A stretch of DNA of 64,000 nt, from assembly GCF_000150275.1 (NCBI RefSeq), contig NW_002060961.1, positions 1,010,600 to 1,074,599 on the forward strand. The letters are read 5' to 3'. This DNA is from Trichoplax adhaerens (taxonomy: Eukaryota; Animalia; Placozoa). This document shows, one piece after another, positions 34,789-52,631 of this stretch. The notes beneath the pieces are model-generated. The model did no database searches and was not told the origin of the DNA. It saw only the letters and a list, made by a program, of their open reading frames with translations. The position numbers and the translations under genes were made by a program. Positions within the stretch are counted from its first letter, which is position 1, and the number at the start of each line of letters is the position of its first letter.

Positions 34789-37700
34789 TCTTCAAGTGGT
34801 CCAGGAATTTGAATCTCGTTGTGGTGAAAAGGTTATCCTGGTAGGTGATAATTCGACCTTGAATCACAGTTGTAAAATTTACAATGGAATGAAACGTTTC
34901 TTTGCTCAAAGCCACCAATAGTATAATAAGTAGAAGACAGTGTTACTATTTTCTTGGTCGATTACCAGCTTTCAAGGACTAGAGAAGGAATAATCCTAAT
35001 TTTTTCAATAGCATGGATTGAACTTGTTTACCTAATGGCTGCAATGCTCGAGCTGACTGATCCGGTAGTTATGACAACAGCAGGAACACGACTGCACAGT
35101 TTAAGCAATGGAGAATGACAACGCCATGACTTGACAAGCAGCCAAGAATGATGATTAAGACAGCTACTTCTAATGATTTCAAGGATTAAAGGGAAGGAAT
35201 GACTATGCCATCTGGGAGAAATGGAATTAGTTATAGCTAAAAAGCTTTGGAAAGAATTTGCCAAGGATGCTATGCTGTACTGTAGCTCTTCGAAAGGTAG
35301 TAGTGGAGTAAAGAAAGCAATTGCAATTTCCTCATACTCTACGTCTACGACGTAGGTCATGTTTAGGCATAACTCCTACTAAAAATGGGCAGGGCAGCAG
35401 GCAGCCACCCGTGCGTTACATACAGTACATGGCACTGTATATGTACAATATATTGTACTGTAAAAAGGTTCCACTGTACTGTACACTGTACTGTACTGTA
35501 CAAGACGACTGTCTTCTTCTGGGTCACCTCCCATATTCCGTGTCCAATCGTCCTCTCCTGTCCACAGACAGTTGCTGTTGCTATGGCTATAGGTGGGCGT
35601 GGATACGGCATGCCTATGTTATGCTGTTGTGCTGAATTGCTAAAATAGAGAGTGTAGTGGTGATATTTTAAAAGTTGCCTATGGATCTCATACAGTACGT
35701 AAAAACAGCAAAGAATAGGTATAGTAAAAGAAGTTAATGATCTGATAAGAAAAATCCAAACTCATGTAGTTCCATAAGCCATATCGATACTATAGGATGC
35801 AAACTATGATTGGATGTCAATTTATACTTTTTATCCTACATTGAACGAGTTCTAGCTTTTAACCATGGAAAGTTAAGAAAAGGAAATAATCGTTATACAC
35901 ATTAAATCCAATCAAGACATTATGCAAATAAAATATTTCATAAACGATAGATTAAACCTATACATTGTCACTGTAAGTCAAATCTTAAAGGATTTAAATT
36001 ATGTCAAATTTGTGCAAATAACTGCACTAATCATTATTAAACGGGTACAGTTTCATTAGCAAGATTTAAAATTACAGATAATAATCAATTATTAATCGTA
36101 GACTTTTAAGATTCCCGATAATTACATTATGAAGAAATTATCTATAAAGCAAATAGTTAATCAGAAATTGATCATAATTGAACAATCAGTAATATTGAAT
36201 TTCTATTAGATGCATATTGTTATTGGCACAATCCACAACTAAAGTTTTCAGATAACTCTTTATCGTAAGAATTCGATGTTTACAGTTTCTAGCTTCAAGT
36301 ATGATGCATGATTGCATTTTATGGTATCAAGTACAATTATTGCGGTGGAGAGCTCGATAATTTAGTAAAGTTGAATTCGTAGGCTTCAAAGTTATAATTA
36401 ATACGATACACTGTTATTAAGAAAATAAGTTTATTATATTAATTTACGCTGTAAATGGCATATGGTACATAAAGTAAATAGGCAGCTATAACAATCATAA
36501 TTATAAAACCAACAAAGATATGAAACAAAAATGAACAATATTTCTACCCTTGGGGTAGAGCACGCATAGGAGAAAGACTGCAGAACTATAAATATCGTAT
36601 AGTATACCATAATTAGGCACAATTGCATGGTGTGATGGAGATTTATTTCATAGAAGTTCAATCTAGTTAAAACGTTAACTACTTTTGAACTGAACTAATA
36701 TAACAAGCAATCAGCAATCGGACTGCAAAAAAAGAACGTACCATATGCTATGATTGTGTATGCAATCAATCTTGTTAAAGCGCACTTGTTAAGTTATGCT
36801 GTTGCAAAAATATCACTGCACAACAATAATGCTGCAATATCGTGTTGTACCGTAAGCATGAGTATATGCTTATAAGCATAGATCTGTAATTTACCTTAGG
36901 TAGCAACATATCAAACAACATATTTAGCAGTATACTGGTACCTATAGTAACAAAAACGTAGGTAATATGTCATGCCATATCTAATGGTGCAATTTTTACT
37001 TTTACTACGTCGAAATATATCACTAGATAATTATAAATTTGATCTTGTTAAAACTCACTATATCTTGCTTGAATCGCATGAAAATAGCTATTAAGTCGTA
37101 GTAAGAAACTACCATCTCCAATGACCTAATAAATGCTTAAGTAATAAGTCACACTATATGTGGCATTTTTACTAGATCTGTTACCGTAAAATATATCAGT
37201 AGTTTATAAAAAGCTGGACTTTATTAAAACGCACTGTTTTGCTTGAGTTATATAAAAATGGCTTTCAGGTTGTAGTTATAAAACTAGTGTCTCAAACAAC
37301 GTTGATTAATATATTCAATTCTATCCTATTACTCTCAGTATAGCGATGCGTAAAATTTGGCGTTCGACTAATGTTTTTAATAATATTTCATAACGTTGTA
37401 ATAAAGTGTCTTCTCCATAGTACAACAAGAACTGCTGTTTCTTATAAACTTCACTTTATTAAATAAGATTAGGTTTGTCTTATAACTACCAAGGATTATC
37501 TAGCTGCAATACGGCTATCTCTAGACTTTCTTAATTAATACGGCAATTTTCACGATTTATATACAATTAGTTACGTAATGATTTTCCTTCAATGCAATCA
37601 TATCTTAACAAATATGTCATAAGGTCATATCTAAATTTGCTATCGTGTTATCAATGCATAATTTACGCTCTTAATTAAAGCGATACAATACAAATCTCAA

Positions 37701-38102
37701 AGTACTAACTTACTTAGCGCAGTCTGTTATCATATCAGAACTAGTAGACCCCTCACTCGTAACACGCAATATATTGTACATGCACAATTTCCTGACTGAG
37801 CATTATACTGTATATACACAAAATGGTTCACCTGCAATTTACAACTTCATAAATTAATTAAACCAAATTAAATTTTCAATGTTGCTTTCTGTAGTCTTAA
37901 CTTAACAGATAAAGTACTATAAATTCTCGATTAAATAATATAATTTTATGATTTTCGTACGGTATATAACGATACTATAGCAACGTGATGACCTGTAAGA
38001 AACGCGTAGTGCGTACTTTTCTCTCCTTTTGGGGGGGGGGGGGGGGAAAGTGGAAAGGGGAAAGGGGGAAAAATGGTAATATAAGGATCTCAAAAAAATT
38101 GC

Positions 38103-38152
38103 NNNNNNNNNNNNNNNNNNNNNNNNNNNNNNNNNNNNNNNNNNNNNNNNNN
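38103..38152. other. Assembly gap (50 N)
   Basis: Run of n, preceded by low-quality-looking poly-G. Confidence 1.
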
Positions 38153-39270
38153 GTATATGTGATACACGACTATAGCACAGATATTAACCGCACTACAGTC
38201 AGTCCACCAATAACTTCCACTAAGATTCAATTTTAATTAACTTAGCGATGCGTAAAGACTGGCATCCAATCGATACTTTTAACAATGATTTATAACATAT
38301 ACGTGATTCACGATTACAGTATAGCGCAGACATTAATTGTATGACATTCAATAGGCCTATAGATTCCATTTAGAATAATTCTAATTAACTAGCGATGAGT
38401 CAAAATTGCATCCAACTGAGACTTTTAACTATGATTTATAAAGGGTATGTATGATTGTTACATGACAATCAGTGTTGCTTCTCCTGGGCTTTAATCCGAT
38501 AATTGATACACAAAAATGTCAATCATTTACATCATTATAATAGTAATGGTGTAAATGATAATTTCTTAGGCCACAGATGTAAAATAGTCAATGGTAAAGG
38601 GTTTGATAATGTGGTCAATGACAATAATATAATTACCCTTTCCTGGAAACTGAAATTAAAAAGCTTATTGAATTACATTACGATATCCTATACAATCCTT
38701 CTATAAATTTAGATACAGAGGAAATCAGTATGATACTTCCACCTATTCAATCATTCGAATAGGGTGGTGAACATTGTTAATAATGATAAGAATAAAGTTG
38801 GAGGTAGACAAGAGAAAAATAATTTGCTTCTGACAAAACGAAAAGCGCTGAAAAAGCCTCGTTTTTTTCAAGCTACTTTCAATTTAATCTCATAATCGAA
38901 ACGTAACGATTCCAATTCGATACACAATCTCCAGTTAGATATAAAGATATCTTTCTTAAATACAGAAATATCAGGTAATCAACAATTTAAATTAGAATTT
39001 TGATTTCATGAAGAGATACAATTTACTGAATTACGTGTGAAGGTGCTTTTATAATGATTAGCGACAGATTGATTACAGTTATAAATCAGCCCAACCTTTC
39101 TTTACCGATACTTCTTTGGCGATAATTATCTTTTTTTAGCATAAAGGTGCTTGAAATAACCTTAAAGGATACATTTATACAATACAAAAACATCAAGTAA
39201 TTGTCAATTCACTAATATGTGATATTTTTGGACATTTTAGAGAGCATAGCAACGCAAAAGTTAGTCAATC

Positions 39271-42200
39271 ATGAGACACCAAACCAGACCCAATCCTAAC
39301 GATTATTTGAAACCATTGGTAGACATTGGATTTAATCACTTCAATAAAGGTGAATTTGATCAAGCTCGAATTTGTTTTGAAAAAGCACTACAAAAAATTC
39401 AAGAAATTGGACATACCAGTATATCGCATGATCGATTGAAATTTGATCTTTACTTACAAATTTCACAAACTTATTATAAGCAATTAAAGTACAACGATGC
39501 CATCGAATTCTGCCAAAAAGCAGAAAATATGGCAAGAACTTTTAAACACCGCCTACATATCGCTCAAGCTCTAGAAAGTCGAGGCAAGATTAAAGTAAAA
39601 CAACAACTATTTCATGCAGCTCTTGATGATTATAATGAAGCTCTACAGTTAAAAATAGCCGTGCACGGCAGTAAACATATTGATGTTGCCGACAGTTACC
39701 ATGCTATCGCAGAGATCCATGTCCTACAGCATCAGTATAATCATGCGCTAACACTACAAGAAAATGGTCTCAAAATAAGGCTCAACAAAATGGGAAGAGA
39801 TCATTTTCTAGTAGCTCAATCCTATTACAGTATTGGGTATACTTACTATCATTTACAACAATATGATAAAGCACTGAAAAATTATAAAAATTGCCTGAAT
39901 ATTCGGTTAAAAAAATCAGATAATGATTACTTAGGCCTTGCCGAAACTTATAATGGCTTAGGTGAAACTTATTTTAAATTGCATGATGATGAAAGTGCTA
40001 TCTCTATGTATCAAAAAAGTCTAAATCTCAAGGTATCTGTCTTTGGAGATTACCAAATTGAAAATAGTAATTTATACTATCGTCTTAGTGTAGTATACCT
40101 ACGCCAAAAGCAGTTTGAAGAAGCTTTTTTCGCTATCCAAAAATGTTTAAAAATTAAATTAGAATACGACGGAAATAATCATATTGATGTTGCAAAATGC
40201 TACAACACCATAGCTTGTATTTATACTGGCCAAGGACTATATCATGATTCGGCCATGATGTTTCGAAAAAGTTTACAAATTAAACTAAATATAGCAGGAT
40301 ATGACCAATTTGATATTGCCGATAGCTATCATAATTGTGGTAATGCCTACTTGAAAATTGAAGAATATCAGCAAGCATTATTAATGTACCAAAAAAGTCT
40401 CTTTATTCTCTTACAAATCGCTAAAAATGACTCCCATCGCAAACATATCGCGGATTTATATCGCGTTATTGCCAAAGTTTATTCGTACCAATGCAAAGAT
40501 GCAGAAGCTATCGTTATGCTCGAAAAATATTGTAATATTATTTTAAGTCAACATGGAGAATGCCAAAAAGTGGCTGCTATCTACAAGGAAATAGCAAGTA
40601 AATACGAAAAACTGCACCAGCAAAATGAAGCTTCCCGTATGCATCAAGAAGCTTTGCGTATTATAAAGAATTTTTCGGATGAAAATGATAGCCCAAAATC
40701 GATAGCATTAGCACAACATGGTAATAAATATTCGACAGGGATTATCGTATACTAGAGTACTTGAAAAATGTATACTTTTAATTAAATTGTAATTGTTTAT
40801 TCCATTCGATATGACTCGATTTTATTACATCTTTAGTTGCAATATTTCGAAAAACTCATTGCATAATATCATTTTTACTGATGCTGAAATAGCTTTCTTA
40901 CCTCTCATTAAGCATTTTTGTAAGTTTTCTAATTTTACCTGTATTTCTACATCTTAATTATTTATTTAGCCATCGGGGATCCGAACTATTACAAAGCTTT
41001 CATGAAAGTCCTGAAAGATGAAAAATGTCGCAGTGATTGTACACCAATCGTATTTGTTGGCCCTGAAAATTCTGGTAAAACATCAATTATGAAATTATTC
41101 TCACGACAAGAACTGATTCCAAATCTAATGCCAACACAAATTATCGATAATCCTGGTATCATGATCGATTTAAATAGTTACAAAATTTTTGACAGTGATA
41201 CTTGTGACATTGGTAGGATACTGGATAGAAAAGTTGTTGCAGCTATAGAATCAACTAAATGGGGTATGATTTATCAAGAAGATATGAAAGATTCTAATCA
41301 TTCAAAATCATCCATAGCTAAAACTGCTGATGATTCTCGATTAAATAATGAAAAAATTCAGGCCTCTTTAATCACACCCAATCAATTGCATGAAGAAAGC
41401 ATTGGTAACTTAAAACCTTACGGTGATCATGACTACTTATCCAATGCTTATACTAAACCGGTAAATTTGAAACATTATTTGGATATCTTTAATAATTATT
41501 ACGAACACAGCTTAGTTATAGAAAGTGATGTCAAAACTCACGGCTACAATTGTGGTAAATTATGGGATTTTGGCGGAAACCCCATGCACTGGATTGCTCA
41601 TCAACCTTTCATGTCAGGGAATAGTATTTATATTCTCACTTATAACATTGCTCAAGATATTAATCAAATAGTGCAAACAACAGACATTGATCCTAATAAA
41701 ATGACTTATTTACAAACTATTGAAGAATGTATAACCAATATTGTTGGCAGGCATAGCAATCAGAATAGAATTGAGCCTTGCGATGATGATAATAGTGATT
41801 ATGATAATGATGGTATAAGTAATGAATATTCCTTACCTGTAATTATTTTGGTTGCATCTCATGGCGACTGCGTTCAAAATATCGAAGAACAACGCAGGTT
41901 ATTTGAAGGATTCGAGCAAGCTCTACTTGCCTCTTTACCACAATATGAGAAGCATATTTGCTCTTCAAGTATTATATTTAATTGTGATCCGCATGATACT
42001 AGCCCAGCTACAATCAGTCAACGCAAACAAAGCTGCCATCATTTGCAACAAATTATACAACGTTTCTATAATTCCTTACCTTTACTTAAAAATTTTATTC
42101 CTATTCGTTGGCAAATTATGTCCAATTTAATATTAAAATCGTCGAATAGATCATATCATCAAGTCAATTCTATATTAGTCGATAAAATTAATAAAATCAT

Positions 42201-43717
42201 GTTTGTTAACGAAATAAAACAATTATCAATAGATTGTGGTTTGTATCAAGGCGATCAAGATTTACATGATATGTTGAAATCTTTGCACAATCTCGGAGAT
42301 ATATTATATTTTCAAGACAATCAAGGTGAAGGAATCATTATAACTCAAATTGAATGGCTATCCGATATATTCCGAAGATTATTCACTATGGGTAAAAATG
42401 CAAGAAAAGTAATTGGAAGAAGATTCCTAATTAATTATGCAGCTCGATTTAAAGGTAAAATACCGCAATCATATCTAGATAACATATTAAAGAAGATCTC
42501 TATTACAGATAAACATAAACAAATTATATATCATTTAATGGAAAAATTCGATATGATTTATCCTATGGAAAAAGATGAAAATGATAATTCGGATGATTTG
42601 TATTACTTTGCACCGTTTACAGTAGAACCCCGTATAAGTTTAGGCCATATTAACTTAGCAAGATATCATGTATCAGATTGGCTATATATTGGTTATGATC
42701 AAAATGAGTTATCATTTATTCCTACTAGCGTATTCATTAGCCTTCTCGTGGCTTGTTTCAAGCAGTGGAAGAATTCAAAAGTTGAATTATACTATAATTG
42801 CGTTAAATATTACGTTAAAGCCAATCAATATTCGTATTATTTGATTGTTAAAAAAGCGAAGCGCCATATAGGCTTACGATATTACTGCGAAAAGGAGAGC
42901 AATGCCACGAAAGATAATATTACGAAAGTGATTGATGAAACTCGCCCTCAAGATTTTGTTTATAGTCAATTAATTGCAATTTTGAAGGAAAAGTTACCCA
43001 CTATTAATTGCAATAACTGCCAATTTAGCATACAGTGCCATTGCAATGAAATGGTTACTCTAAATGGATTAGATCAACGTGATTATGAAGCAATTGAGTG
43101 TCATTATTGTCATCAAATTGTTAGGACTCACTATTTGAAAGACTGGACGATTTATACAAGAAACTCAGAAGGTAATGTCTATTGTAATTTTGTGTTAACA
43201 ATGATTAGTAGAGCGGTAAATGTGAGATGATTAGCATTAGTTCAGATACCGGTATACAATCAAATTCTATTGGTACCATTTACATATGAATTTAATCGAT
43301 AAAGCATCTATTTTTCTTTTTTTAGTCTAACCTAGAGACTAGAAAACTTTGCATACTTATGCATCAATAGCTAGTCTCAATCACTGCTCGACACCAAACT
43401 CTATTATCGGCATACTAACTGATTTCTACATTAATTCTTTTATTGTAGTGCCTCAATGTTATTTTTTCAAGATTTCTAAGCACATTGGGATAGATTGGAC
43501 TAAATTAGCAGCAAAGCTGGATGCTAACATTGATGTAGATACAATCAAAGTTGAAAATCAAACAGTTTTTGATCGTGCATTAAAGTTATTAAATGAGTGG
43601 TTTAATAGAAATTGTAGCAGTAATGCAACTCAAAATTTGATTACTGCTTTGAGAGATATTGATCGATATGATATTCTACTAAAGTTAGGAATCTCTGGCA
43701 ATAAACTTGACATGTAG
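39271..43717 (+). CDS. Roco protein 1: TPR array - Roc GTPase - COR - Cys cluster - Death domain (~1306 aa)
   Basis: Exons 39271-40720, 40970-43171 and 43449-43717 join three separate ORFs through phase-1 GT-AG introns. 42-aa TPRs (IADSYHNCGNAY...), P-loop GPENSGKTS, G3 LWDFGG, G4-like LVASHGD, COR signatures IPIRW and LKSLHNLGDILYF, Death domain IGIDWTKLAAKL...LLNEWF...LITALRDIDRYDI. Confidence 0.88.
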
Positions 43718-44166
43718 ACCCTTATGAGCATTTTGACCCAATATTTACTTGATTACTGTATTAATGTAGGTAATATTGGATGTGATTGATCGATTTATGA
43801 TGGATTTTACATGAAGTTAATCCGATTTACCCTTCTAAATATGCTTATATTTTGGATATTAGCCAAAAGTTAAATATCATAGGCTCTAAAATTGTAAGAG
43901 AGCTATTCTAACATGGTATAGTTGAGTACTACAGAAACTAATAATGCTAAACTTCACCGAATATTAAATATTTTTGTCTTTAATCCTATGAGTTATGAAA
44001 AGAATCAATTTCATCTTCTATCGTATTGTATAAAACAATTTTGGCTGTGTATTACCTAAATGATGTTCTTTGTTTTCTGTTAAAATATTTTTGACCGTAA
44101 ATATTGTAATTATCACTTACCTATGATATTACTCCGATTAATTCAAGCGAAAAGTGAGCCAGTTTG

Positions 44167-44795
44167 TAATAAAGATATCATAATTCATCGGACATTATTT
44201 TTGATCTTTATTCATCAAAATAGAAGAATTTGTTGAACAAAATGCGAAATATTTACTGCGCCTGAATATAATACCACAAATAGAGGCTGCTGACAAAAAG
44301 AATATTTTATACAATAAATATAAAGCGTGATCGAAAATACTATTTTAATATCCTACAAGCTTGTTTCATATTTGGAAGCAAAGTGCAAGGAACTGAGCAA
44401 TTTGATAATAAAGCTATTTGTGGAGTACCCCGATGTTCTTCGTGATTCAAACTTTTAACTCTTCTAGTTCATTAACTAATGCTAATAAAGATATCGTAGT
44501 TCTTTGGACCTTGCTTTTAATCTTTACTCATCAAAATAAAAGAATTTCATAAAGGGAATGCGAAATACTTGCGCCTTAGCCTAATATTACCGATAGTTGT
44601 TCCTGATAGAAAAACTGTATTTACATAATTAATATAAAGTGCCATCGAAAATACTATTAAAGATCCAATAAGCTCGTCTTATATTTGGGCTGAGCTAGTA
44701 GCGAACTGAACAATTTGATGATATAGCCATCTATGAAGCGCGCTGCCGTTTTTGTGATTCAAATTTTAGTTTCTCCAGGTTAATTAACCATCGTT
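44167..44795. repeat. Diverged direct tandem duplication, 316 bp x2
   Basis: taataaagatatc starts at 44167 and 44483; colinear blocks tcatcaaaata, atgcgaaata, atcgaaaatactatt, caatttgat and gtgattcaaa. Confidence 0.8.
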
Positions 44796-47700
44796 ATGTT
44801 GGTAATTAGATTTAATTACGTAATTTCATTTGTTTCTATATATTGATCATGAACAAAAACAACGCAATATAATGCTCAACTAAACACTATTACTATTCAC
44901 AGTGTCTACAGCCTCTTTGAGGGCCCACAACAGGTTCTGTTCTTGCCAGATAGAGGAATTTCAGTACATTGCAAATTTATAGCAACGAGCTAACAATTGG
45001 AATACTGCACTATAAAGTTCACAATTTTAATATCGAACTTTGAACATCAGACAAGGATTATAGAAACATTAGAAGTTCAACAATCTCTCTACCTAAAGTA
45101 ATGCATGGAATTTATAAGAAAAGCATAGGAATTAATGAATGGTCCCGATTATCCTCATCCATTGAAATTATAATTAGTACCGTAGGCGATGGAGCAATAT
45201 GAATGACAATGGCATTGAGTAGAAAGTAATGTCTGGCAGGTTTATTAGCTCTAACGGGTGACGGAGAAAGAGATTCTAAATAATATCGTTACCTACGGTA
45301 CTTCTAACTCATAACAAGGTACTCTACTCGAAGAAAAATCCCTTATTTTCTCTATTTTCTTAGCAAATTCTATACCAGTCAGGTTTCTAAGTTCGAAAGA
45401 CTCAACTTGGACCGAATCATCTCACAAGCTAGTAGACTAATTTCAAAGACTCTGTTGCATTATATAATTATGGCAAGTTTTACTGTACTAGCGCTTCTAA
45501 TACTATTGAAAATACCCTTGCTCTGTTTTTAGTTACTGAATTCTTTGCCTGTGGGAAAGATCTTTTAAGGTTGCATAGTAAATAGCGATGGTGATAGTAA
45601 GTTCTTATTAATCATACTCGTATATTGTTATTGTACTCTATATTGGTCAATATGATTCTTTTGTTGACAAAAGAATCTCTACCATCAGATAAAAAATCAA
45701 TCATCATCACTCATTATAATTACTTAACCCAAGTCTGTTAATATAAAAAGAAAAAAGTGGCAGGAGTATTCTTAACTGCATTAAAAGCGATAATATCACT
45801 TTCCTGCTATGAGTATCGTTAGATGTACAAGTATTTAGTTCCTTTACAAGCTCTAATCGTATGATATCAAGGATTGAAAGTACAGCGATTATTGAATAAG
45901 TTATTATTGAACTTTTCATCGAACAGTAGCGTTGGTGGGAACGATCAGCATTCAAAGTCTAAATTTGACGACAATGCTGTTAACTTTGTTATGTACTAGT
46001 AATACTATCAGCATAGTGAGCAAATATAGAGATACTGCATAGTCTAGTAAAAAGACGGCAATTACTTGCTGGTTTTAGAATACCTTGAATAGACCATGTT
46101 ATATGACGTAATAGTTTGTAGAACTTTACACTAGTATGCTATGTTTTATTTATGCGAAAGCAACCGAAAATGATGTAGATTATGCGTGCAAACCACGTTG
46201 AGCGTCTACTTTGTCTAGCGCGATTGACCTATAATAATTATAATTAATGGATAATATGAAGAAAGACAACCATTGTGTAAGAGAGCGAAAGAGTATTTCA
46301 TAATTATGTGATTTAGTATGACAATTTTAATTATTGGTGGTGTTCGTAGGATAAAAAAGGAAATGTTCACTGTTATGTCTGTTAGTTGATATATGAGTCT
46401 ATTTCAATGTTGCTACGACCCACTGTCGATTGATTGATTGGTAGTTTTACATCATTGTTGATAAACAAAGCACGATATTAAATGGCTGTCACGGCATGAA
46501 TCACCCGGAAGAGTCAATGACTAAATTTAGTGATTAACATTTCTATATGAAGATAGCTAATAATGACTTACAATAAGAGCTAGGGTAGGAGAAAATTAAT
46601 GATATGCCACTAGACAGTATTTTGCGGTATTTAATGATATGCCATCGTAATTTATCGAAATTTAATAATATGGATCAATTTAAAATTAGCTACCGTATAA
46701 CAACTCTTACAACAGTACAGTATAATTTACTATATAACAAAATGAATTGATTATAGTGTTATGTCTTGTAACGCTTGTGATGAATATCCTGAAGATATTC
46801 AATTTTAGAGGATACTATAAATAATTCTGTGTATAGACATACCGTAATCTAATTATCTAGAATCGTTCAGTATATCTCTAAGATTATGAATAATTTCTGT
46901 ATTAATTTAGCTATTCCAATAAGAACTAAATTGCATGATCTGTTATGACTCATACATGATAGCTGGCGCCGGAGGGTAATTAAGCTCGGCAGATAATTGA
47001 ATAAAAGAAAAGTGCTATAGTTCTTTACCGCAGAAGCAAAGGCGTCTAAATTCTTGTGAGGTAGTTAAGGATAATAAATCCCGGAAGCTATAGTAATTTA
47101 GAGGTTTGTTTTACGTTGTCTTTACCGCGGTTTTTTTGTTTTATTGTTTCTTTAGTATAAAATAATAAATTATCTGGATTATAATTAATTGATTACAATC
47201 ACATGCCTACACCTAATAGTATTAACAAAGCCGACTAGTGTAAAAAAATTACAAGAGCATCCTGAACAGTGCAAGTAGCAAAAAAACATTTTCTTTCTTG
47301 AGGATCAGTAGACATATGCAGTTCTGTAGCAAAATCTTCTGGCTTGGGATAGTATTAATAAAAGATATGCAAAAAAGTCAAATTAACATACTTATATTCT
47401 AACTTTTATCAATCTTAATCCACGTCTTTAAAACGCAAAATCGATATCACCGTTAATTAATGTTATAAATCAAATTTTCTTCTTTCAGTTAATCTTTTAA
47501 TTTTTCGCATTTCTAAATCTTAACCTATACCATTAACGAACAATTGACATCATTATTCATTAACGAACCAATTTTCTTTGTAAGCTTAATCTTTCATGTC
47601 TACAGACATGTAAAAATAGATGGTATGGTGATTTTATCACATTAATGTATTTCAAAACTGTAACAATAAAATGATTATATTACAAGGTATTCGCTAGTTA

Positions 47701-48072: not shown

Positions 48073-51000
48073 ATGGAAATAAAACTTCAACGTAAAGAAG
48101 CTAATAAGCTTTTTAAACAAGGATCCTATGAAGAAGCTCGATCTCTTTATAGGCAAGTGTTGGATCGAATTGGAGGGTCTAATGTATTGCCTCGATTCGA
48201 GATCACACTCCAGATTGTTAAAACCTCTATTTATCTCCAAGATTACGAGATTGCAAAAAGTGACTGTGAGAGTGCTAAACTACTAGCAAGAAGATTAAGT
48301 GACAAGAAACTTCTCCAATGCGAGAAATATTTAGGTGAGATTTGCCATCAACAAGGTAATCATGAAGACGCATTACAATATTACAATTTAGCTTACCGAC
48401 TATCAGTACAAATTAACGGAAGCAAACATCTTACAACTGCTGATATATCGCACCAGATTGGAGATGTATACGTAGCAATGCAACATTACAGCGATGCTTT
48501 AACGTCCTATAAGCAAGCACTGAAGGTAAGACAAAAAAGACTTGCGAAATTCAGCAAATTGATCGCTAACTCATACTTTGCTATTGGAAATGTTTACTCT
48601 TGTGAAAGAGAGTATAAACTAGCCATCACAAACTTTCAAGAGAGTTTAGCTATTCGACACAAACTGTTTGAAAATAATCATTTGCTTATTGCTGACTGCT
48701 ACGAAAGATTAGCGCAGATATGTAACGATCAATGTAAATTTCATGAAGCTGCATCATTGTTTGAAAAATGTCTTAAAATTTACCTAGTAGTTGGTGGTAA
48801 AACAAATTTCGATGTTGCACAACTTTACCGTAACATTGGATTGGCCAAATTTGATAATGGTGATCATGGAGAGGCCCTTTCTAGTCATCAGAAATGCTTA
48901 GAAATCTGCATCAACATATATGGAGAAGAGCATCCTAACGTAGCTATGTCGTATAGCAGTTTGGCTTCTATATACTATCAGCAAGAGGAATACCAGCAAG
49001 CTTATGATATGTTTCGAAAGTCTCTGGATATTAATTTGAAAGTATTAGGTAGTAATCACTGGATAATTGCTGATACTTATCATAATATCGGTAATATTCA
49101 TTATAATCAAGAAAAATGCAGCGATGCTTTAAAGATGTACCAGGTAGCTATGTTCATGCGACTGAAACAAACAAGAAATGATCATATTCGACATCGTATT
49201 GCTGATTCGTATTTCGTAGTTGCTAATGTATATGCAAAGCAGTCAAAGTACCATGATGCTCTGGAAATGTTTCTAAAGTCTGTCAGTATTTTCCAAAATT
49301 TATATGGAGAAAGTAATATTGTAGCCATAATTTATCAAAAAATTGCGGAGTTATACGATAGGGATGGCAGAGCTGACGACGCAAATGATATGCGATCGAG
49401 AGCTTCGGAAATATTCGATAGATTAGAGCATGGACAAATTCCAACACCGATACAAACTACATCACCAGGTACAGTATTACAAGTCAAACTGTATAATAGA
49501 GCAGAAATTTCCAACTGAAATATTTTTATCAAAGTAATTAGCCAAAGTTGCGACTTGATGGTAGCTAATTTCTTACCAACAACTACTAGTTTTACGCGTA
49601 TACAAAATGCCTTTCATAAGATACCATAAGGTAGAGACGCTGAAATCTATTCCTAACGGAAGCATAACTTAGTTTATATCTTTCATTTTATAAGACATTG
49701 TATTGTATGCTTTACTTTACATATAAGATATATTAAATATTCATTTTCAGCCCTAAAATCATTCATTTTACAAGCTAATTCTAAATTTTGTTGTTGGACG
49801 TTTCAAAGTGTTACTTGCATTTATTTATTACGCGCTTAATTTAACTAGACGTTATTGTTGTTGTAGTTATCGTCGAAAATGATTACTTCAAGGCTTACAT
49901 GATTGCTACAATATATGAAGAATGCCATAGCGATTGCACACGCCTCACATTTATTGGTCCTAGCGATTCTGGTAAAAATTTTATCGTCAAGTTGTTAACG
50001 AAGCAAAATCTTACATCGCCATATGTCGCTGAAAATACTGAAGCAATGCTGGATCTTTCCACTGGTAATATCTTTAAACAGAAGACAGATGACTATCGTA
50101 AAATAGTCGGTAAAAAGATTGCTGCAACAATGCTGTCGATAACGCAACAGATGGAGAGTCAGTATAAAATGGAAGAGAGTTCTTTATCTGAGCTAATACT
50201 TTCGAAAATTGAAACAGTCCCGGAGGCGAACCCTACTATCATTTCTTCTTTCACTTCTGAATATGATGAAAACAGACTTGAAGAAAGAATTTCAAATACC
50301 GATACGAATCTAAACGCTAGTCCAAGCACTCAATATGCTAGTGTAGATACTAGACGATATTTAGATACATTCAATGATTTCATGCAGCAGTCTCTTCAAC
50401 TATGTGATGCAGACAATTCTCAAAGATCTTATTACAGCAATGTTTGGGAATTCGGAAGTAAGATATCGTGGAATCTACGCCAACTTTTTACGCTTCGTAA
50501 CAGCATCTATATTTTGACATTGGACATTACTGAAGCTACAAACCAAACATCTGCAACGAACGAGGAGCGTACAACATTGAATACCTTTCTAGATAGTATC
50601 AAAGAATGTTTAGTCTCTGTTCTTGACGGTCACTGCGATGATGCCATTTCAGATCCAATTCAAGTTGACGATGCTGACTTGGATGTCGGTATATATGAAG
50701 AATTTGCATTACCTGTCGTTATCTTTGTTGGATTTCATAATGATTGCGTAACCTCAGATACTGTAAGAATTTTCAATAATTTAACAGAAACAATTTTTTC
50801 AACCTTTCCACAGTACAGTCGACATATTATACCGTCCGATGTTGTGTTTAATTGCAATCCGAAAGATACTAGCTCTTATGCAATTGAACAGCGTGAGACA
50901 TCTTGTCAGGCATTACGCAAATTAATTCAGCATTTTACTAAATTAATGCCTGTATTGCAAGACTGTGTTCCAATACGATGGCATATCTTGCTATCTATAC

Positions 51001-52631
51001 TGCATAAATCCGTAATTAACGATGGATGCGCGTGCAGTTCAAACAGCAGTAACTTCCCGCGTAGAGTGATGTCCGTGCACGAGGTAGAGGAACTTCTTCA
51101 AGATTGTGGATTATTTCGAAGCGATCAAGATACGTGCAAGATGTTACAACATTTGCATGATCTAGGAGAAATATTGTATGTTAAGCCGGATTATGGCAAA
51201 GAATACATTATTACTCAAGTCGAATGGTTAGCGAAGATTTTCCAAGTTCTCTTTGCATCCGCTTTCGGCCAAAAAGCAGACGCTACGAGAAGATTCTCTT
51301 TCACCAGGATTACTAAAATTAAGACAGACGGTATAATGAAAGAAAGTCATATAACGAACGTATTAAGAGAGTTTAGTTTAGACGACAAAGAGAAAGAAGC
51401 AATATTACAGCTATTAGAAAATTACAATATCATATGTCCAAGAAATAATGCGAATGCCAATAACGAAAGTGTTGCAGCGGCTGGACGTGAGTACTTCGTA
51501 CCGATTATCATTACTCCAAATTTCAAATCGAAAATTGATATTGGCAGTCTAAATGATGCTGGATATCATGTATCAGAAAGCTTATATATCCAATTCGAGG
51601 ATAATTCGTATATTCCTGATGTGATATTCTATCCTTTCCTTATTTCTTGCTTGAGAAAGTGGAATAATCTGGAAGCAGAATTATTTTATAGAGGTGCTAA
51701 ACTATTTTTGGAGAATGATTTATACTACCTGCTTATTGTCAAGGAGAGATCCAAAATTAGTTTGCGGTATTTCTATAAGAAAAGTACTAATCTGTCTGAC
51801 GAACTGATTAAGAAATTAGTTTGGAAAAGTCGTCCACAAGAGCTTATTCAAGGCAGATTTTTCGATACTGCCAAGAAGTATATGCCAAAGTCCATGAATA
51901 GTAGTTTAGCAAATTATGTTAAATGTAGCGAATGTGGCCAATTCTTAAATTTGTTCAGTTTCACAGAAGATAGTCGTTGTAAAAAGTGTATTTATTGCGG
52001 TAAAACTGCAAAATCCATGGGTGATTGGATAAACCTGGGTAAGTTTGGGATAGACGAAGTGTAGTAAAATTACCATATACTTTATACTATGATAGTAATT
52101 TGCTCATAATTGTTGTCGGTACCATTTCTAGTTTAGGTTCAACTGAACAGGCTATACCTTTTAGCAACTACTATGATAGATTTATGCTTATTTGTGTCAT
52201 ATATTTATTCGTAGAAGCCTATAGAATAGAATTAAATAAAGTTATTGCTTTTACATCAAGTAAGATAATAATTTACGCTGTAATTATTGTTACTTACAGG
52301 GTCTACAGCTGATACAAGGCGCCATTTTTTCACCGTAGCTAAAGAAATTGGTATCGATTGGGAGAAGCTAGCGGGTGCACTAGGCATACATTGTAACGAG
52401 ACCTCAGTTATCGACGCCGAGAACAAAAATTATTATAATAAAGCAAATCAACTCTTGGAGAAATGGTATACGCAAAATTACTGCCTCAAAGCTACTTACA
52501 CTCTAGCATGTGCTCTAGATCATATTGAAAGACGCGATATTCTTGCAAAGCTCAAGTTCAATTCGTTGGAACTGTCTGATCTTAAAACTGCCGGAAGAAC
52601 CGATATTCTTGAGCGGCTAAATTGGCATTAG
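48073..52631 (+). CDS. Roco protein 2: TPR array - degenerate Roc - COR - Cys cluster - Death domain (~1299 aa)
   Basis: Exons 48073-49468, 49867-52038 and 52300-52631, with the same phase-1 intron layout as paralogue 1. P-loop GPSDSGKNF, G3 VWEFGS, G4-like VGFHND, COR VPIRW and LQHLHDLGEILY, Death EIGIDWEKLAGAL...LLEKWY. Start ATG 48073 assumed; the ORF track starts at a TTG. Confidence 0.86.

What the first reader, a model, noticed from the sequence alone, without database searches (positions are those of the whole stretch)
49956..50750. Roco 2 looks like a pseudo-GTPase next to a motif-intact paralogue
Seen: paralogue 1 has GPENSGKTS / LWDFGG / LVASHGD, while paralogue 2 has GPSDSGKNF / VWEFGS / VGFHND. 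The Mg-binding S/T after the P-loop Lys becomes Asn, and DxxG becomes ExxS. Established: S/T-to-N at this position (Ras S17N, LRRK2 T1348N) disrupts GTP binding and often acts as a dominant negative. The 721-codon ORF is uninterrupted, so it is not a decaying pseudogene. Inference: the two could form a heterodimeric active/inactive pair (helper/sensor or enzyme/inhibitor), like paired plant NLRs.
Basis: partly seen in the sequence, partly recalled or inferred. Interest (0 to 1): 0.82.

Follow-up and report, generated by a model that had tools for sequence, protein, structure and literature searches.

The report
Placozoan Roco paralogue with dead GTPase motifs
One of two neighbouring Trichoplax TPR-Roc-COR-Death genes has lost all four key GTP-binding motifs yet is kept intact by selection, so it is probably a nucleotide-independent "pseudo-GTPase" scaffold; the idea that it works as an obligate pair with its neighbour is weakened, because the sister strain keeps it but lacks the neighbour.

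Summary
The window is Trichoplax adhaerens. Paralogue 2 is TRIADDRAFT_61020 and paralogue 1 is TRIADDRAFT_61019. Both are three-exon TPR / Roc-COR-zinc ribbon / Death genes.

- **Motifs:** paralogue 2 has GKN, ExxS and FHND. Of 38 G-domain copies in this genome, only it has GKN. Across 75 relatives, GK[S/T] fails only here and in one copy with no P-loop.
- **Not an error or a decaying pseudogene:** the independent Trichoplax sp. H2 assembly has the same motifs. H1-versus-H2 dN/dS is 0.26.
- **Acceleration is G-domain-specific:** 40 versus 9 changes in Roc, against 31 versus 26 in COR.
- **Fold:** the AlphaFold model matches LRRK1, CtRoco and LRRK2 Roc-COR.

The pairing idea is poorly supported. 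Tandem arrays are the rule in this family, and the two genes lie head to tail. At least six other lineages also lost G motifs. The H2 contig has a clean 8.2 kb deletion that removes paralogue 1 but keeps paralogue 2.

The family expansion is already published, and this scan noted similar clusters elsewhere in the genome. The pseudo-GTPase member appears to be undescribed.

The parts
48073..49468 (+). Paralogue 2 (TRIADDRAFT_61020), exon with the TPR array; ends in phase 1
   Evidence: Pfam TPR_12 4e-70. The start Met matches public models P0001 and P0122. The donor G|GTACAG was read.
49469..49866 (+). Intron 1 of paralogue 2 (GT..AG, phase 1). The H2 model uses an acceptor 18 nt upstream.
49867..52038 (+). 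Paralogue 2 Roc-COR-zinc ribbon exon (symmetrical 1-1 exon)
   Evidence: AF2 model pTM 0.78. Foldseek hits to LRRK1, CtRoco and LRRK2 at 1e-14 to 1e-9.
49899..50933 (+). Degenerate Roc (G) domain, residues 1-345 of the ORF. It has the canonical beta1-alpha1...beta6-alpha5 order, with an insert of about 100 aa between beta2 and beta3.
49956..49982 (+). G1 P-loop GPSDSGKNF. Lys26 is kept. Asn27 (AAT, 49977-79) replaces the Mg-binding Ser/Thr.
50019..50021 (+). Pro41 at the position of the family's switch-I (G2) Thr, next to a 4-residue deletion
50445..50459 (+). G3 W-E-F-G-S in place of W-D-F-G/A-G (Asp to Glu, Gly to Ser)
50733..50744 (+). G4 F-H-N-D in place of [S/T]-H-x-D. The Asp is kept. 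In H2 it reads F-H-D-D.
51051..51833 (+). COR-A (about residues 385-528) and COR-B (about 530-645). Conservation equals that of paralogue 1.
   Evidence: Pfam COR-A 3e-9
51924..51998 (+). CxxC...CxxC zinc-ribbon-like motif (C676, C679, C697, C700), invariant in 39 family sequences
52039..52299 (+). Intron 2 of paralogue 2 (G|GTAAGT ... CAG|, phase 1)
52300..52631 (+). Death-domain exon of paralogue 2, including the stop codon
   Evidence: Pfam Death 2.8e-10
39271..43717 (+). Paralogue 1 (TRIADDRAFT_61019), motif-intact. Exons 39271-40720, 40970-43171 and 43449-43717, with the same phase-1 introns.
36302..44514 (.). 8.2 kb present in T. adhaerens but absent from the collinear Trichoplax sp. H2 contig. 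It contains the whole of paralogue 1.

Best explanation
Paralogue 2 is a selectively maintained pseudo-GTPase member of the placozoan TPR-Roc-COR-zinc ribbon-Death (kinase-less Roco) family.

**Shown:**
- It arose with paralogue 1 by an old whole-gene tandem duplication.
- Its Roc domain then lost both Mg2+ ligands: P-loop Ser/Thr to Asn, and switch-I Thr to Pro.
- It also lost the DxxG Asp and the gamma-phosphate-sensing Gly, and the first G4 residue.
- COR, the zinc ribbon, TPR and Death stayed as conserved as in its sister.

**Inferred:**
- It can no longer run a canonical Mg-GTP switch cycle.
- P-loop Lys26 and G4 Asp282 survive, so weak or Mg-independent nucleotide binding is not excluded.
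- In the Roco model, GTP drives monomerisation and the GDP or empty state is a COR-B dimer (PMC6337361). On that model, paralogue 2 would be locked in the dimer-prone, nucleotide-insensitive state.
- It would then act as a scaffold or adaptor linking a TPR-bound ligand to Death-domain partners. It could do this as a homodimer, or by heterodimerising through COR with GTP-competent paralogues. Paralogue 1 need not be the partner.
For: - **Motif census:**
- **Same motifs in H2:**
- **Intact gene structure and domains:**
- **Purifying selection:** 5 nonsynonymous and 5 synonymous H1/H2 differences; dN/dS 0.26, p=0.036. Nonsynonymous 5/3096 versus non-coding 31/5603, p=0.005.
- **Sister relationship:** paralogues 1 and 2 are sisters (SH-aLRT 99), with end branches 1.38 versus 0.73.
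- **Roc-specific asymmetry:** at family-conserved columns, paralogue 2 alone changed 40 times versus 9 for paralogue 1 in Roc (p=9e-6). In COR the counts are 31 versus 26 (p=0.6). Heterogeneity p=0.006.
- **Partitioned ML branches:** Roc 1.36 versus 0.40; COR 1.19 versus 0.86.
- **Retention of conserved residues:** Roc 0.47 versus 0.73; COR 0.58 versus 0.60.
- **Fold retained:** AF2 pTM 0.78 with canonical G-domain topology. Foldseek top hits are LRRK1, CtRoco and LRRK2 Roc-COR at 1e-14. The Atlas features hit Roc/Ras clusters at 0.95.
- **Family homology:** the family profile hits CtRoco 3DPU at 1e-13, aligning G1 and G3.
- **Biochemical precedent:** LRRK2 T1348N is GTP-binding deficient (PMC3155532).
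Against: - There is no biochemistry. Lys26 and Asp282 remain, so GDP or GTP binding without Mg2+ is possible.
- No orthologue outside the near-identical H1/H2 pair could be found, so long-term conservation of GKN/ExxS itself is untested.
- The H1/H2 selection test rests on only 10 substitutions.
- No expression data were found.
- The AF2 model is driven by the family alignment, so it cannot by itself show that this copy folds.
- The dimer-locked mechanism is extrapolated from bacterial CtRoco.
Confidence: 0.6

Rival explanations
1. One reading: paralogues 1 and 2 form a dedicated heterodimeric active/inactive pair (sensor/helper or enzyme/inhibitor), like paired plant NLRs.
For: They are adjacent, on the same strand and sister genes. 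The COR dimerisation region of paralogue 2 is as conserved as that of paralogue 1. Families of G proteins activated by dimerisation do evolve pseudo-GTPase partners, as septins have (PMC10731463).
Against: The H2 contig keeps paralogue 2 but has a clean 8.2 kb deletion of paralogue 1, and H2 has no other close copy among its proteins. Tandem arrays are the family norm, for example four genes in 31 kb on C1404 and arrays on C1389, C1392, C1375 and C1391. The two genes lie head to tail, about 4.3 kb apart, not head to head. Other degenerate members have no intact copy within tens of kb. The two have diverged to 32% identity with no sign of co-variation tested.
Confidence: 0.12
2. Paralogue 2 is still a nucleotide-binding protein with non-canonical chemistry. 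It would bind GDP or GTP (or another nucleotide) without Mg2+ and stay permanently in one state, making it a hydrolysis-dead, nucleotide-bound type of pseudo-GTPase.
For: GxxxxGK with Lys26 and the guanine-specifying Asp282 of G4 are retained in both H1 and H2. The G-domain core is still predicted to fold. Ras S17N keeps GDP binding (established knowledge).
Against: Four motifs changed at once, including both Mg2+ ligands. Switch I is shortened by 4 residues. The Roc core lost its extra constraint relative to COR.
Confidence: 0.2
3. Paralogue 2 is a non-functional or recently silenced gene drifting toward pseudogene status. The open frames are a remnant.
For: It is the most divergent of the 25 full-length copies first aligned against the family HMM, with 763 bits. 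It has a long end branch. No expression evidence was found. Two of the five H1/H2 amino-acid changes lie in the Roc-COR exon, one of them inside G4.
Against: About 1300 codons over three exons remain open in a 33% GC genome, with consensus splice sites. COR, zinc ribbon, Death and TPR are conserved like the sister's. dN/dS is 0.26, and the nonsynonymous rate is 0.29 times the non-coding rate, p=0.005.
Confidence: 0.07
4. The odd motifs are sequencing or assembly errors.
For: None found.
Against: The independently sequenced H2 genome gives identical G1, G2 and G3 residues and a related G4. Four separate codons are involved.
Confidence: 0.01

Closest known systems
Published ROCO expansion of Trichoplax adhaerens (Civiero et al. 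2014, PMC4104024: at least 17 ROCO genes with TPR, LRR, CARD, Death)
   Same: Paralogues 1 and 2 are members: TPR, then Roc-COR, then Death. The annotated proteins are TRIADDRAFT_61019 and TRIADDRAFT_61020.
   Different: That survey does not report loss of G motifs. The genome search here found at least 38 G-domain-bearing copies, and at least six lineages with degenerate motifs.
LRRK2 T1348N / K1347A and Ras S17N (engineered nucleotide-binding mutants)
   Same: The same P-loop position carries Asn. T1348N is GTP-binding deficient (PMC3155532).
   Different: Here the Asn is natural and fixed in two strains. It is accompanied by loss of the G2 Thr, the G3 Asp and Gly, and the first G4 residue. 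There is no kinase output. A dominant-negative effect through GEF sequestration is not expected, because Roco proteins do not need GEFs (PMC6337361).
Chlorobium tepidum Roco (3DPU, 6HLU) and LRRK1/LRRK2 Roc-COR
   Same: Roc-COR fold: Foldseek 1e-14 and profile 1e-13, with the switch II motif WDFGGQ..H..HQ.F shared by the family. COR-B is the likely dimerisation element.
   Different: An insert of about 100 residues (helix plus a disordered stretch) between beta2 and beta3. TPR instead of LRR. A zinc ribbon and a Death tail. G motifs lost in paralogue 2.
DAPK1 (Roc-COR followed by a Death domain)
   Same: Roc-COR with a C-terminal Death domain.
   Different: No kinase, calmodulin or ankyrin part. 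TPR lies at the N-terminus. Not orthologous, because this is a placozoan-specific expansion.
Septin pseudoGTPases (PMC10731463) and other pseudoGTPases (p190RhoGAP, AAGAB)
   Same: Degeneration of G motifs recurs inside a family whose G domains work by dimerisation, while the assembly interfaces are kept.
   Different: A different G-protein family. No structural or biochemical data exist for the placozoan protein. No searchable paper contains both 'pseudoGTPase' and 'Roco'.
Paired plant NLRs (RGA4/RGA5, RRS1/RPS4)
   Same: A repeat-sensor / NTPase / death-fold-like architecture by analogy, and one copy with degenerate nucleotide-binding motifs.
   Different: A Roc-COR GTPase rather than a STAND ATPase. 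Head to tail rather than head to head. The partner is dispensable in H2.

Membership tests
Roco (Roc-COR) proteins | Ras-like Roc G-domain fold directly N-terminal to COR | tested here: met
   The AF2 model has the beta1-alpha1-beta2-beta3-...-alpha5 order. Foldseek hits LRRK1 8E05, CtRoco 6HLU/3DPU and LRRK2 at 1e-14 to 1e-9 over about 720 columns. Atlas features hit Roc/Ras clusters at 0.95. Pfam Roc itself is not detected in paralogue 2 and is sub-threshold in paralogue 1.
Roco (Roc-COR) proteins | COR domain (COR-A plus COR-B) | tested here: met
   Pfam COR-A 3.1e-9, above the cutoff. The profile hits CtRoco COR. Structural match to 3DPT COR, TM 0.72 on the target.
Roco (Roc-COR) proteins | Canonical G1-G4 motifs for Mg-GTP binding and hydrolysis | tested here: not met
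   Paralogue 2 has GKN, Pro for the G2 Thr, ExxS and FHND. Paralogue 1 and most of the 38 copies in the genome keep these motifs.
PseudoGTPase (pseudoenzyme) | G-domain fold retained with catalytic or binding motifs lost | tested here: met
PseudoGTPase (pseudoenzyme) | Gene maintained by selection, not a pseudogene | tested here: met
   dN/dS 0.26 (p=0.036). Nonsynonymous versus non-coding p=0.005. Intact exons and splice sites. Power is limited to 10 substitutions.
PseudoGTPase (pseudoenzyme) | Demonstrated lack of GTP hydrolysis and/or nucleotide binding | not testable with these tools
   Needs recombinant protein assays.
Paired sensor/helper receptor genes (plant paired-NLR type) | Both partners co-retained and genetically linked, typically head to head | tested here: not met
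   Head to tail on the + strand. The H2 contig lacks paralogue 1 but keeps paralogue 2.
Paired sensor/helper receptor genes (plant paired-NLR type) | Physical heterocomplex of the two products | not testable with these tools
   Complex prediction was unreachable and then withdrawn.

The most novel reading that the evidence does not exclude
The placozoan Roco expansion works as a receptor network. In it, recurrently evolved pseudo-GTPase members (this gene, plus the L025, L028, L033, L038/39/46 and L040/41/44 lineages) dimerise through COR-B with GTP-competent members. This would set or gate Death/CARD signalling. It would be a GTPase-based analogue of plant NLR sensor/helper networks and of septin pseudoGTPase subunits.
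Probability: 0.12. Interest if true: 0.75.

Novelty: new variant of a known kind. Interest (0 to 1): 0.45.

Why it matters
Roco proteins such as LRRK2, LRRK1 and DAPK1 are studied largely through engineered nucleotide-binding mutants. This gene is a natural Roco fixed under selection. It carries the T1348N-like change and has lost the other G motifs, while COR and the signalling tail stay conserved. That suggests the Roc-COR scaffold has a function that does not need the GTP cycle.

It offers a ready-made comparison pair (paralogue 1 versus paralogue 2) and a natural knock-out of the partner (strain H2). It also shows that loss of G motifs recurs in the placozoan family, which bears on whether these genes form an NLR-like receptor repertoire.

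The claim is computational. The family itself is already published.

Tried and rejected
- **First word-based protein search:** blank. The annotated proteins are about 1305 aa, outside the tool's length window. This was solved with the exhaustive search and region searches.
- **Orthologue outside Trichoplax H1/H2:** none found. The exhaustive search gave nothing between 34% and 100% identity. Both metagenome scans were blank. The ENA metagenome ORFs (P0005, P0008 and others) belong to other subfamilies.
- **Expression or literature by accession:** none.
- **Complex prediction (COR of paralogue 2 with COR of paralogue 1):** never ran. It was unreachable and then withdrawn, so there is no verdict on binding.
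- **Atlas on the window sequence:** busy.
- **phmmer of paralogue 2 against PDB:** it hit designer PPR proteins at residues 548-595 with zero significant stretches. I treat this as a composition or repeat artefact.
- **dS between paralogues 1 and 2:** saturated at 32% identity, so no dN/dS was attempted there.
- **Spliced protein:** Exons were searched by reference, and the public models P0001, P0122 and P0002 were used instead.
- **Rejected explanations:** assembly error. Scaffold mis-join as the cause of the H1/H2 difference is also rejected, because the N gap at about 38.1 kb does not coincide with either breakpoint, and paralogues 1 and 2 lie in one gap-free stretch.
Full report
**Identity of the locus.** The window is G000:C1396:1010600-1074599 of a 105.6 Mb, 1414-contig, roughly 33% GC genome. 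The ORF 49899-52064 is letter for letter part of XP_002116953.1 / TRIADDRAFT_61020 (B3S9T4) of Trichoplax adhaerens. The neighbouring ORF 41002-43230 is part of TRIADDRAFT_61019 (B3S9T3). I call them paralogue 2 and paralogue 1.

**Gene structure.** Each ORF is the middle exon of a three-exon gene.
- In paralogue 2, the TPR exon ends at 49468 (donor G|GTACAG).
- Intron 1 is 49469-49866.
- The Roc-COR-zinc ribbon exon is 49867-52038 (donor G|GTAAGT).
- Intron 2 is 52039-52299.
- The Death exon runs to the stop at 52631.
- Paralogue 1 has introns at the homologous positions, 40721-40969 and 43172-43448. All four introns are phase 1.

Pfam finds strong TPR arrays, COR-A above threshold in both genes, and Death in both tail exons. 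Roc is found only sub-threshold, and only in paralogue 1. The two genes are collinear over their whole length: TPR 33%, Roc-COR 32% and Death 42% identity. They are therefore an old whole-gene tandem duplicate. Exons were used by reference, and the public models P0001, P0122 and P0002 served for full-length queries.

A fourth loss was missed. The family has a near-invariant Thr exactly 18 residues after GK[S/T], the canonical switch-I (G2) spacing. Paralogue 2 has Pro41 there, next to a 4-residue deletion. So both Mg2+ ligands are gone, together with the DxxG Asp and the gamma-phosphate Gly. P-loop Lys26 and G4 Asp282 remain.

**Family context.** A six-frame search of the genome gave 65 matches. 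I extracted 38 open frames that cover the G domain.
- GK[S/T] is present in 33. Only paralogue 2 has GKN.
- Across 75 relatives, including other animals such as a brittle star, GK[S/T] fails only in paralogue 2 (H1 and H2) and in one copy with no P-loop at all.
- Paralogue 2 is not the only degenerate member. L025 (EFCG, SYID), L028 (HFGW), L033 (all lost), L038/39/46 (GKA in one, DFGD), L040/41/44 (EDKS, NFNN, TNSD), L029 and L024 also deviate. That is at least six changes on the tree.
- Several of these degenerate copies are conserved in both H1 and H2.
- The family profile matches CtRoco 3DPU at 1e-13, aligning G1, switch II and COR-A. It also matches MbRoco2 and LRRK2 Roc.
- The expansion itself is published: at least 17 ROCO genes with TPR, CARD and Death (PMC4104024).
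- No searchable paper combines 'pseudoGTPase' with 'Roco'.

**Is it real and maintained?** The independently assembled Trichoplax sp. H2 genome encodes RDD37412.1 with the same G1, G2 and G3, and with FHDD at G4. Sequencing error is therefore excluded.

Between H1 and H2, the coding sequence has 5 nonsynonymous and 5 synonymous differences. dN/dS is 0.26, computed exon by exon (one-sided binomial p=0.036). Nonsynonymous divergence is 5/3096, against 31/5603 in flanking and intronic DNA (Fisher p=0.005). Power is low, but neutrality is disfavoured. So is the survival of about 1300 open codons and four consensus splice sites in an AT-rich genome.

**Where the divergence lies.** Paralogues 1 and 2 are sisters (SH-aLRT 99), with end branches of 1.38 and 0.73. 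The table below compares the two by domain.

| Measure | Roc domain | COR |
|---|---|---|
| Family-conserved columns changed in paralogue 2 alone vs paralogue 1 alone | 40 vs 9 (p=9e-6) | 31 vs 26 (p=0.6) |
| Partitioned ML end branches, paralogue 2 vs 1 | 1.36 vs 0.40 | 1.19 vs 0.86 |
| Retention of conserved residues, paralogue 2 vs 1 | 0.47 vs 0.73 | 0.58 vs 0.60 |

Heterogeneity between the two domains in the first row has p=0.006. L025, L033 and L040 show the same deficit of Roc relative to COR. Constraint was therefore relaxed or redirected specifically in the G domain. The COR region, the invariant CxxC...CxxC zinc ribbon and the Death domain were kept.

**Fold.** An AlphaFold2 model built with a 39-sequence family alignment has mean pLDDT 74 and pTM 0.78.
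- It shows canonical G-domain topology.
- Switch I (residues 39-51) is low-confidence.
- An insert between beta2 and beta3, shared by the family, consists of a long helix (66-103), a disordered stretch (about 99-151) and a second helix (155-167).
- COR-A and COR-B follow.

Foldseek places it with LRRK1, CtRoco and LRRK2 Roc-COR at 1e-14 to 1e-9. Language-model features of the Roc part hit Roc/Ras clusters at 0.95. The model leans on the alignment, so it shows compatibility with the fold rather than proof of folding.

**The pairing hypothesis.** Three observations weigh against a dedicated pair.
1. Tandem same-strand arrays are the normal arrangement of the family: C1404 has four genes in 31 kb, and C1389, C1392, C1375, C1368 and C1391 also carry arrays. 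Earlier notes of this scan describe similar clusters elsewhere in the genome.
2. Other degenerate members lack a nearby intact copy.
3. The H2 contig NOWV01000244.1 is collinear with the window from TRAPPC10 to beyond eIF-1A, but it jumps from 36301 to 44515.
   - The junction holds about 30 nt of filler that duplicates a nearby sequence, and it has no Ns.
   - The missing 8.2 kb contains all of paralogue 1.
   - The H1 scaffold gap at about 38.1 kb does not coincide with either breakpoint, and paralogues 1 and 2 lie on one gap-free stretch.
   - No H2 protein is more than 36% identical to paralogue 1.
   - The two paralogues are anciently diverged, while H1 and H2 differ by about 0.5%. This is therefore a recent loss, or a presence/absence polymorphism, of the intact partner on a haplotype that keeps the pseudo-GTPase.

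Heterodimerisation with paralogue 1 in H1, or with other paralogues, remains possible. It could not be tested because complex prediction never ran.

**Mechanism proposed.**
- *Established:* Asn at the P-loop Ser/Thr position abolishes GTP binding in LRRK2 (PMC3155532). Roco proteins dimerise mainly through COR-B. In the CtRoco model they are dimeric when empty or GDP-bound and monomerise with GTP (PMC6337361).
- *Inferred:* paralogue 2 cannot perform the Mg-GTP-driven step. It therefore behaves as a nucleotide-insensitive, dimer-prone scaffold that couples TPR-mediated recognition to Death-domain partners. Alternatively, it modulates GTP-competent relatives by COR heterodimerisation, much as septin pseudoGTPases do (PMC10731463).
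- *Alternative:* Mg-independent nucleotide binding is the main rival, because Lys26 and Asp282 survive.

**Verdict.** The pseudo-GTPase reading is well supported at the level of sequence, evolution and fold. The obligate-pair reading is not supported. This is a new variant within a published family, of moderate interest.

Noticed in passing
G000 loci L025, L028, L029, L033, L038/L039/L046, L040/L041/L044, L024: At least six further lineages of the same TPR-Roc-COR family have degenerate G motifs. Examples are EFCG with SYID; HFGW; P-loop lost; DFGD with GKA; and EDKS with NFNN and TNSD. Several are conserved in both H1 and H2. Three of them (L025, L033, L040) also retain fewer conserved residues in Roc than in COR.
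   Followed up: partly
window 50070-50432 (residues ~58-178 of the ORF); whole family: All family members carry an insert of about 100 residues between beta2 and beta3 of the Roc domain that CtRoco and LRRK2 lack. It is predicted as a long helix, a disordered acidic/polar stretch and a second helix.
   Followed up: partly
window 51924-51998 and homologous positions in 39 sequences: An invariant CxxC...CxxC zinc-ribbon-like motif lies between COR-B and the Death exon. Pfam does not annotate it.
   Followed up: no
window 49469-49866, 52039-52299, 40721-40969, 43172-43448: The Roc-COR exon is a symmetrical phase 1-1 exon in both genes. TPR and Death lie on separate exons. This layout suits exon shuffling of heads and tails.
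   Followed up: partly
window 44515-45826 vs L031:6247-7566: The 1.3 kb just right of the H2 deletion is only 94% identical between H1 and H2, against 99.4% for the next 16.6 kb. Window 45640-45826 aligns twice, which points to a local duplication difference.
   Followed up: no
window ~38100-38150: A run of N (scaffold gap) lies upstream of paralogue 1 in the T. adhaerens assembly.
   Followed up: partly
L047 (ENA ERZ23499115, sample SAMN08714533, 5.6 kb contig) and P0008, P0009, P0010, P0013, P0015, P0028: Metagenome assemblies hold single-exon Roc-COR ORFs that are 37-53% identical to Trichoplax family members. They are presumably from other placozoans in environmental samples. None is an orthologue of paralogue 2.
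   Followed up: partly
L036 (G000:C1404:1780000-1789999): One family member sits at the C-terminal end of a giant uninterrupted open frame. The frame is 2750 aa, and at least 2233 aa lie within the fetched locus. Its Roc-COR is at about residues 1620-2212.
   Followed up: no
window 49847-49866: The H1 and H2 gene models use different intron-1 acceptors 18 nt apart. The H2 model adds six residues. Which one is used is unknown.
   Followed up: no
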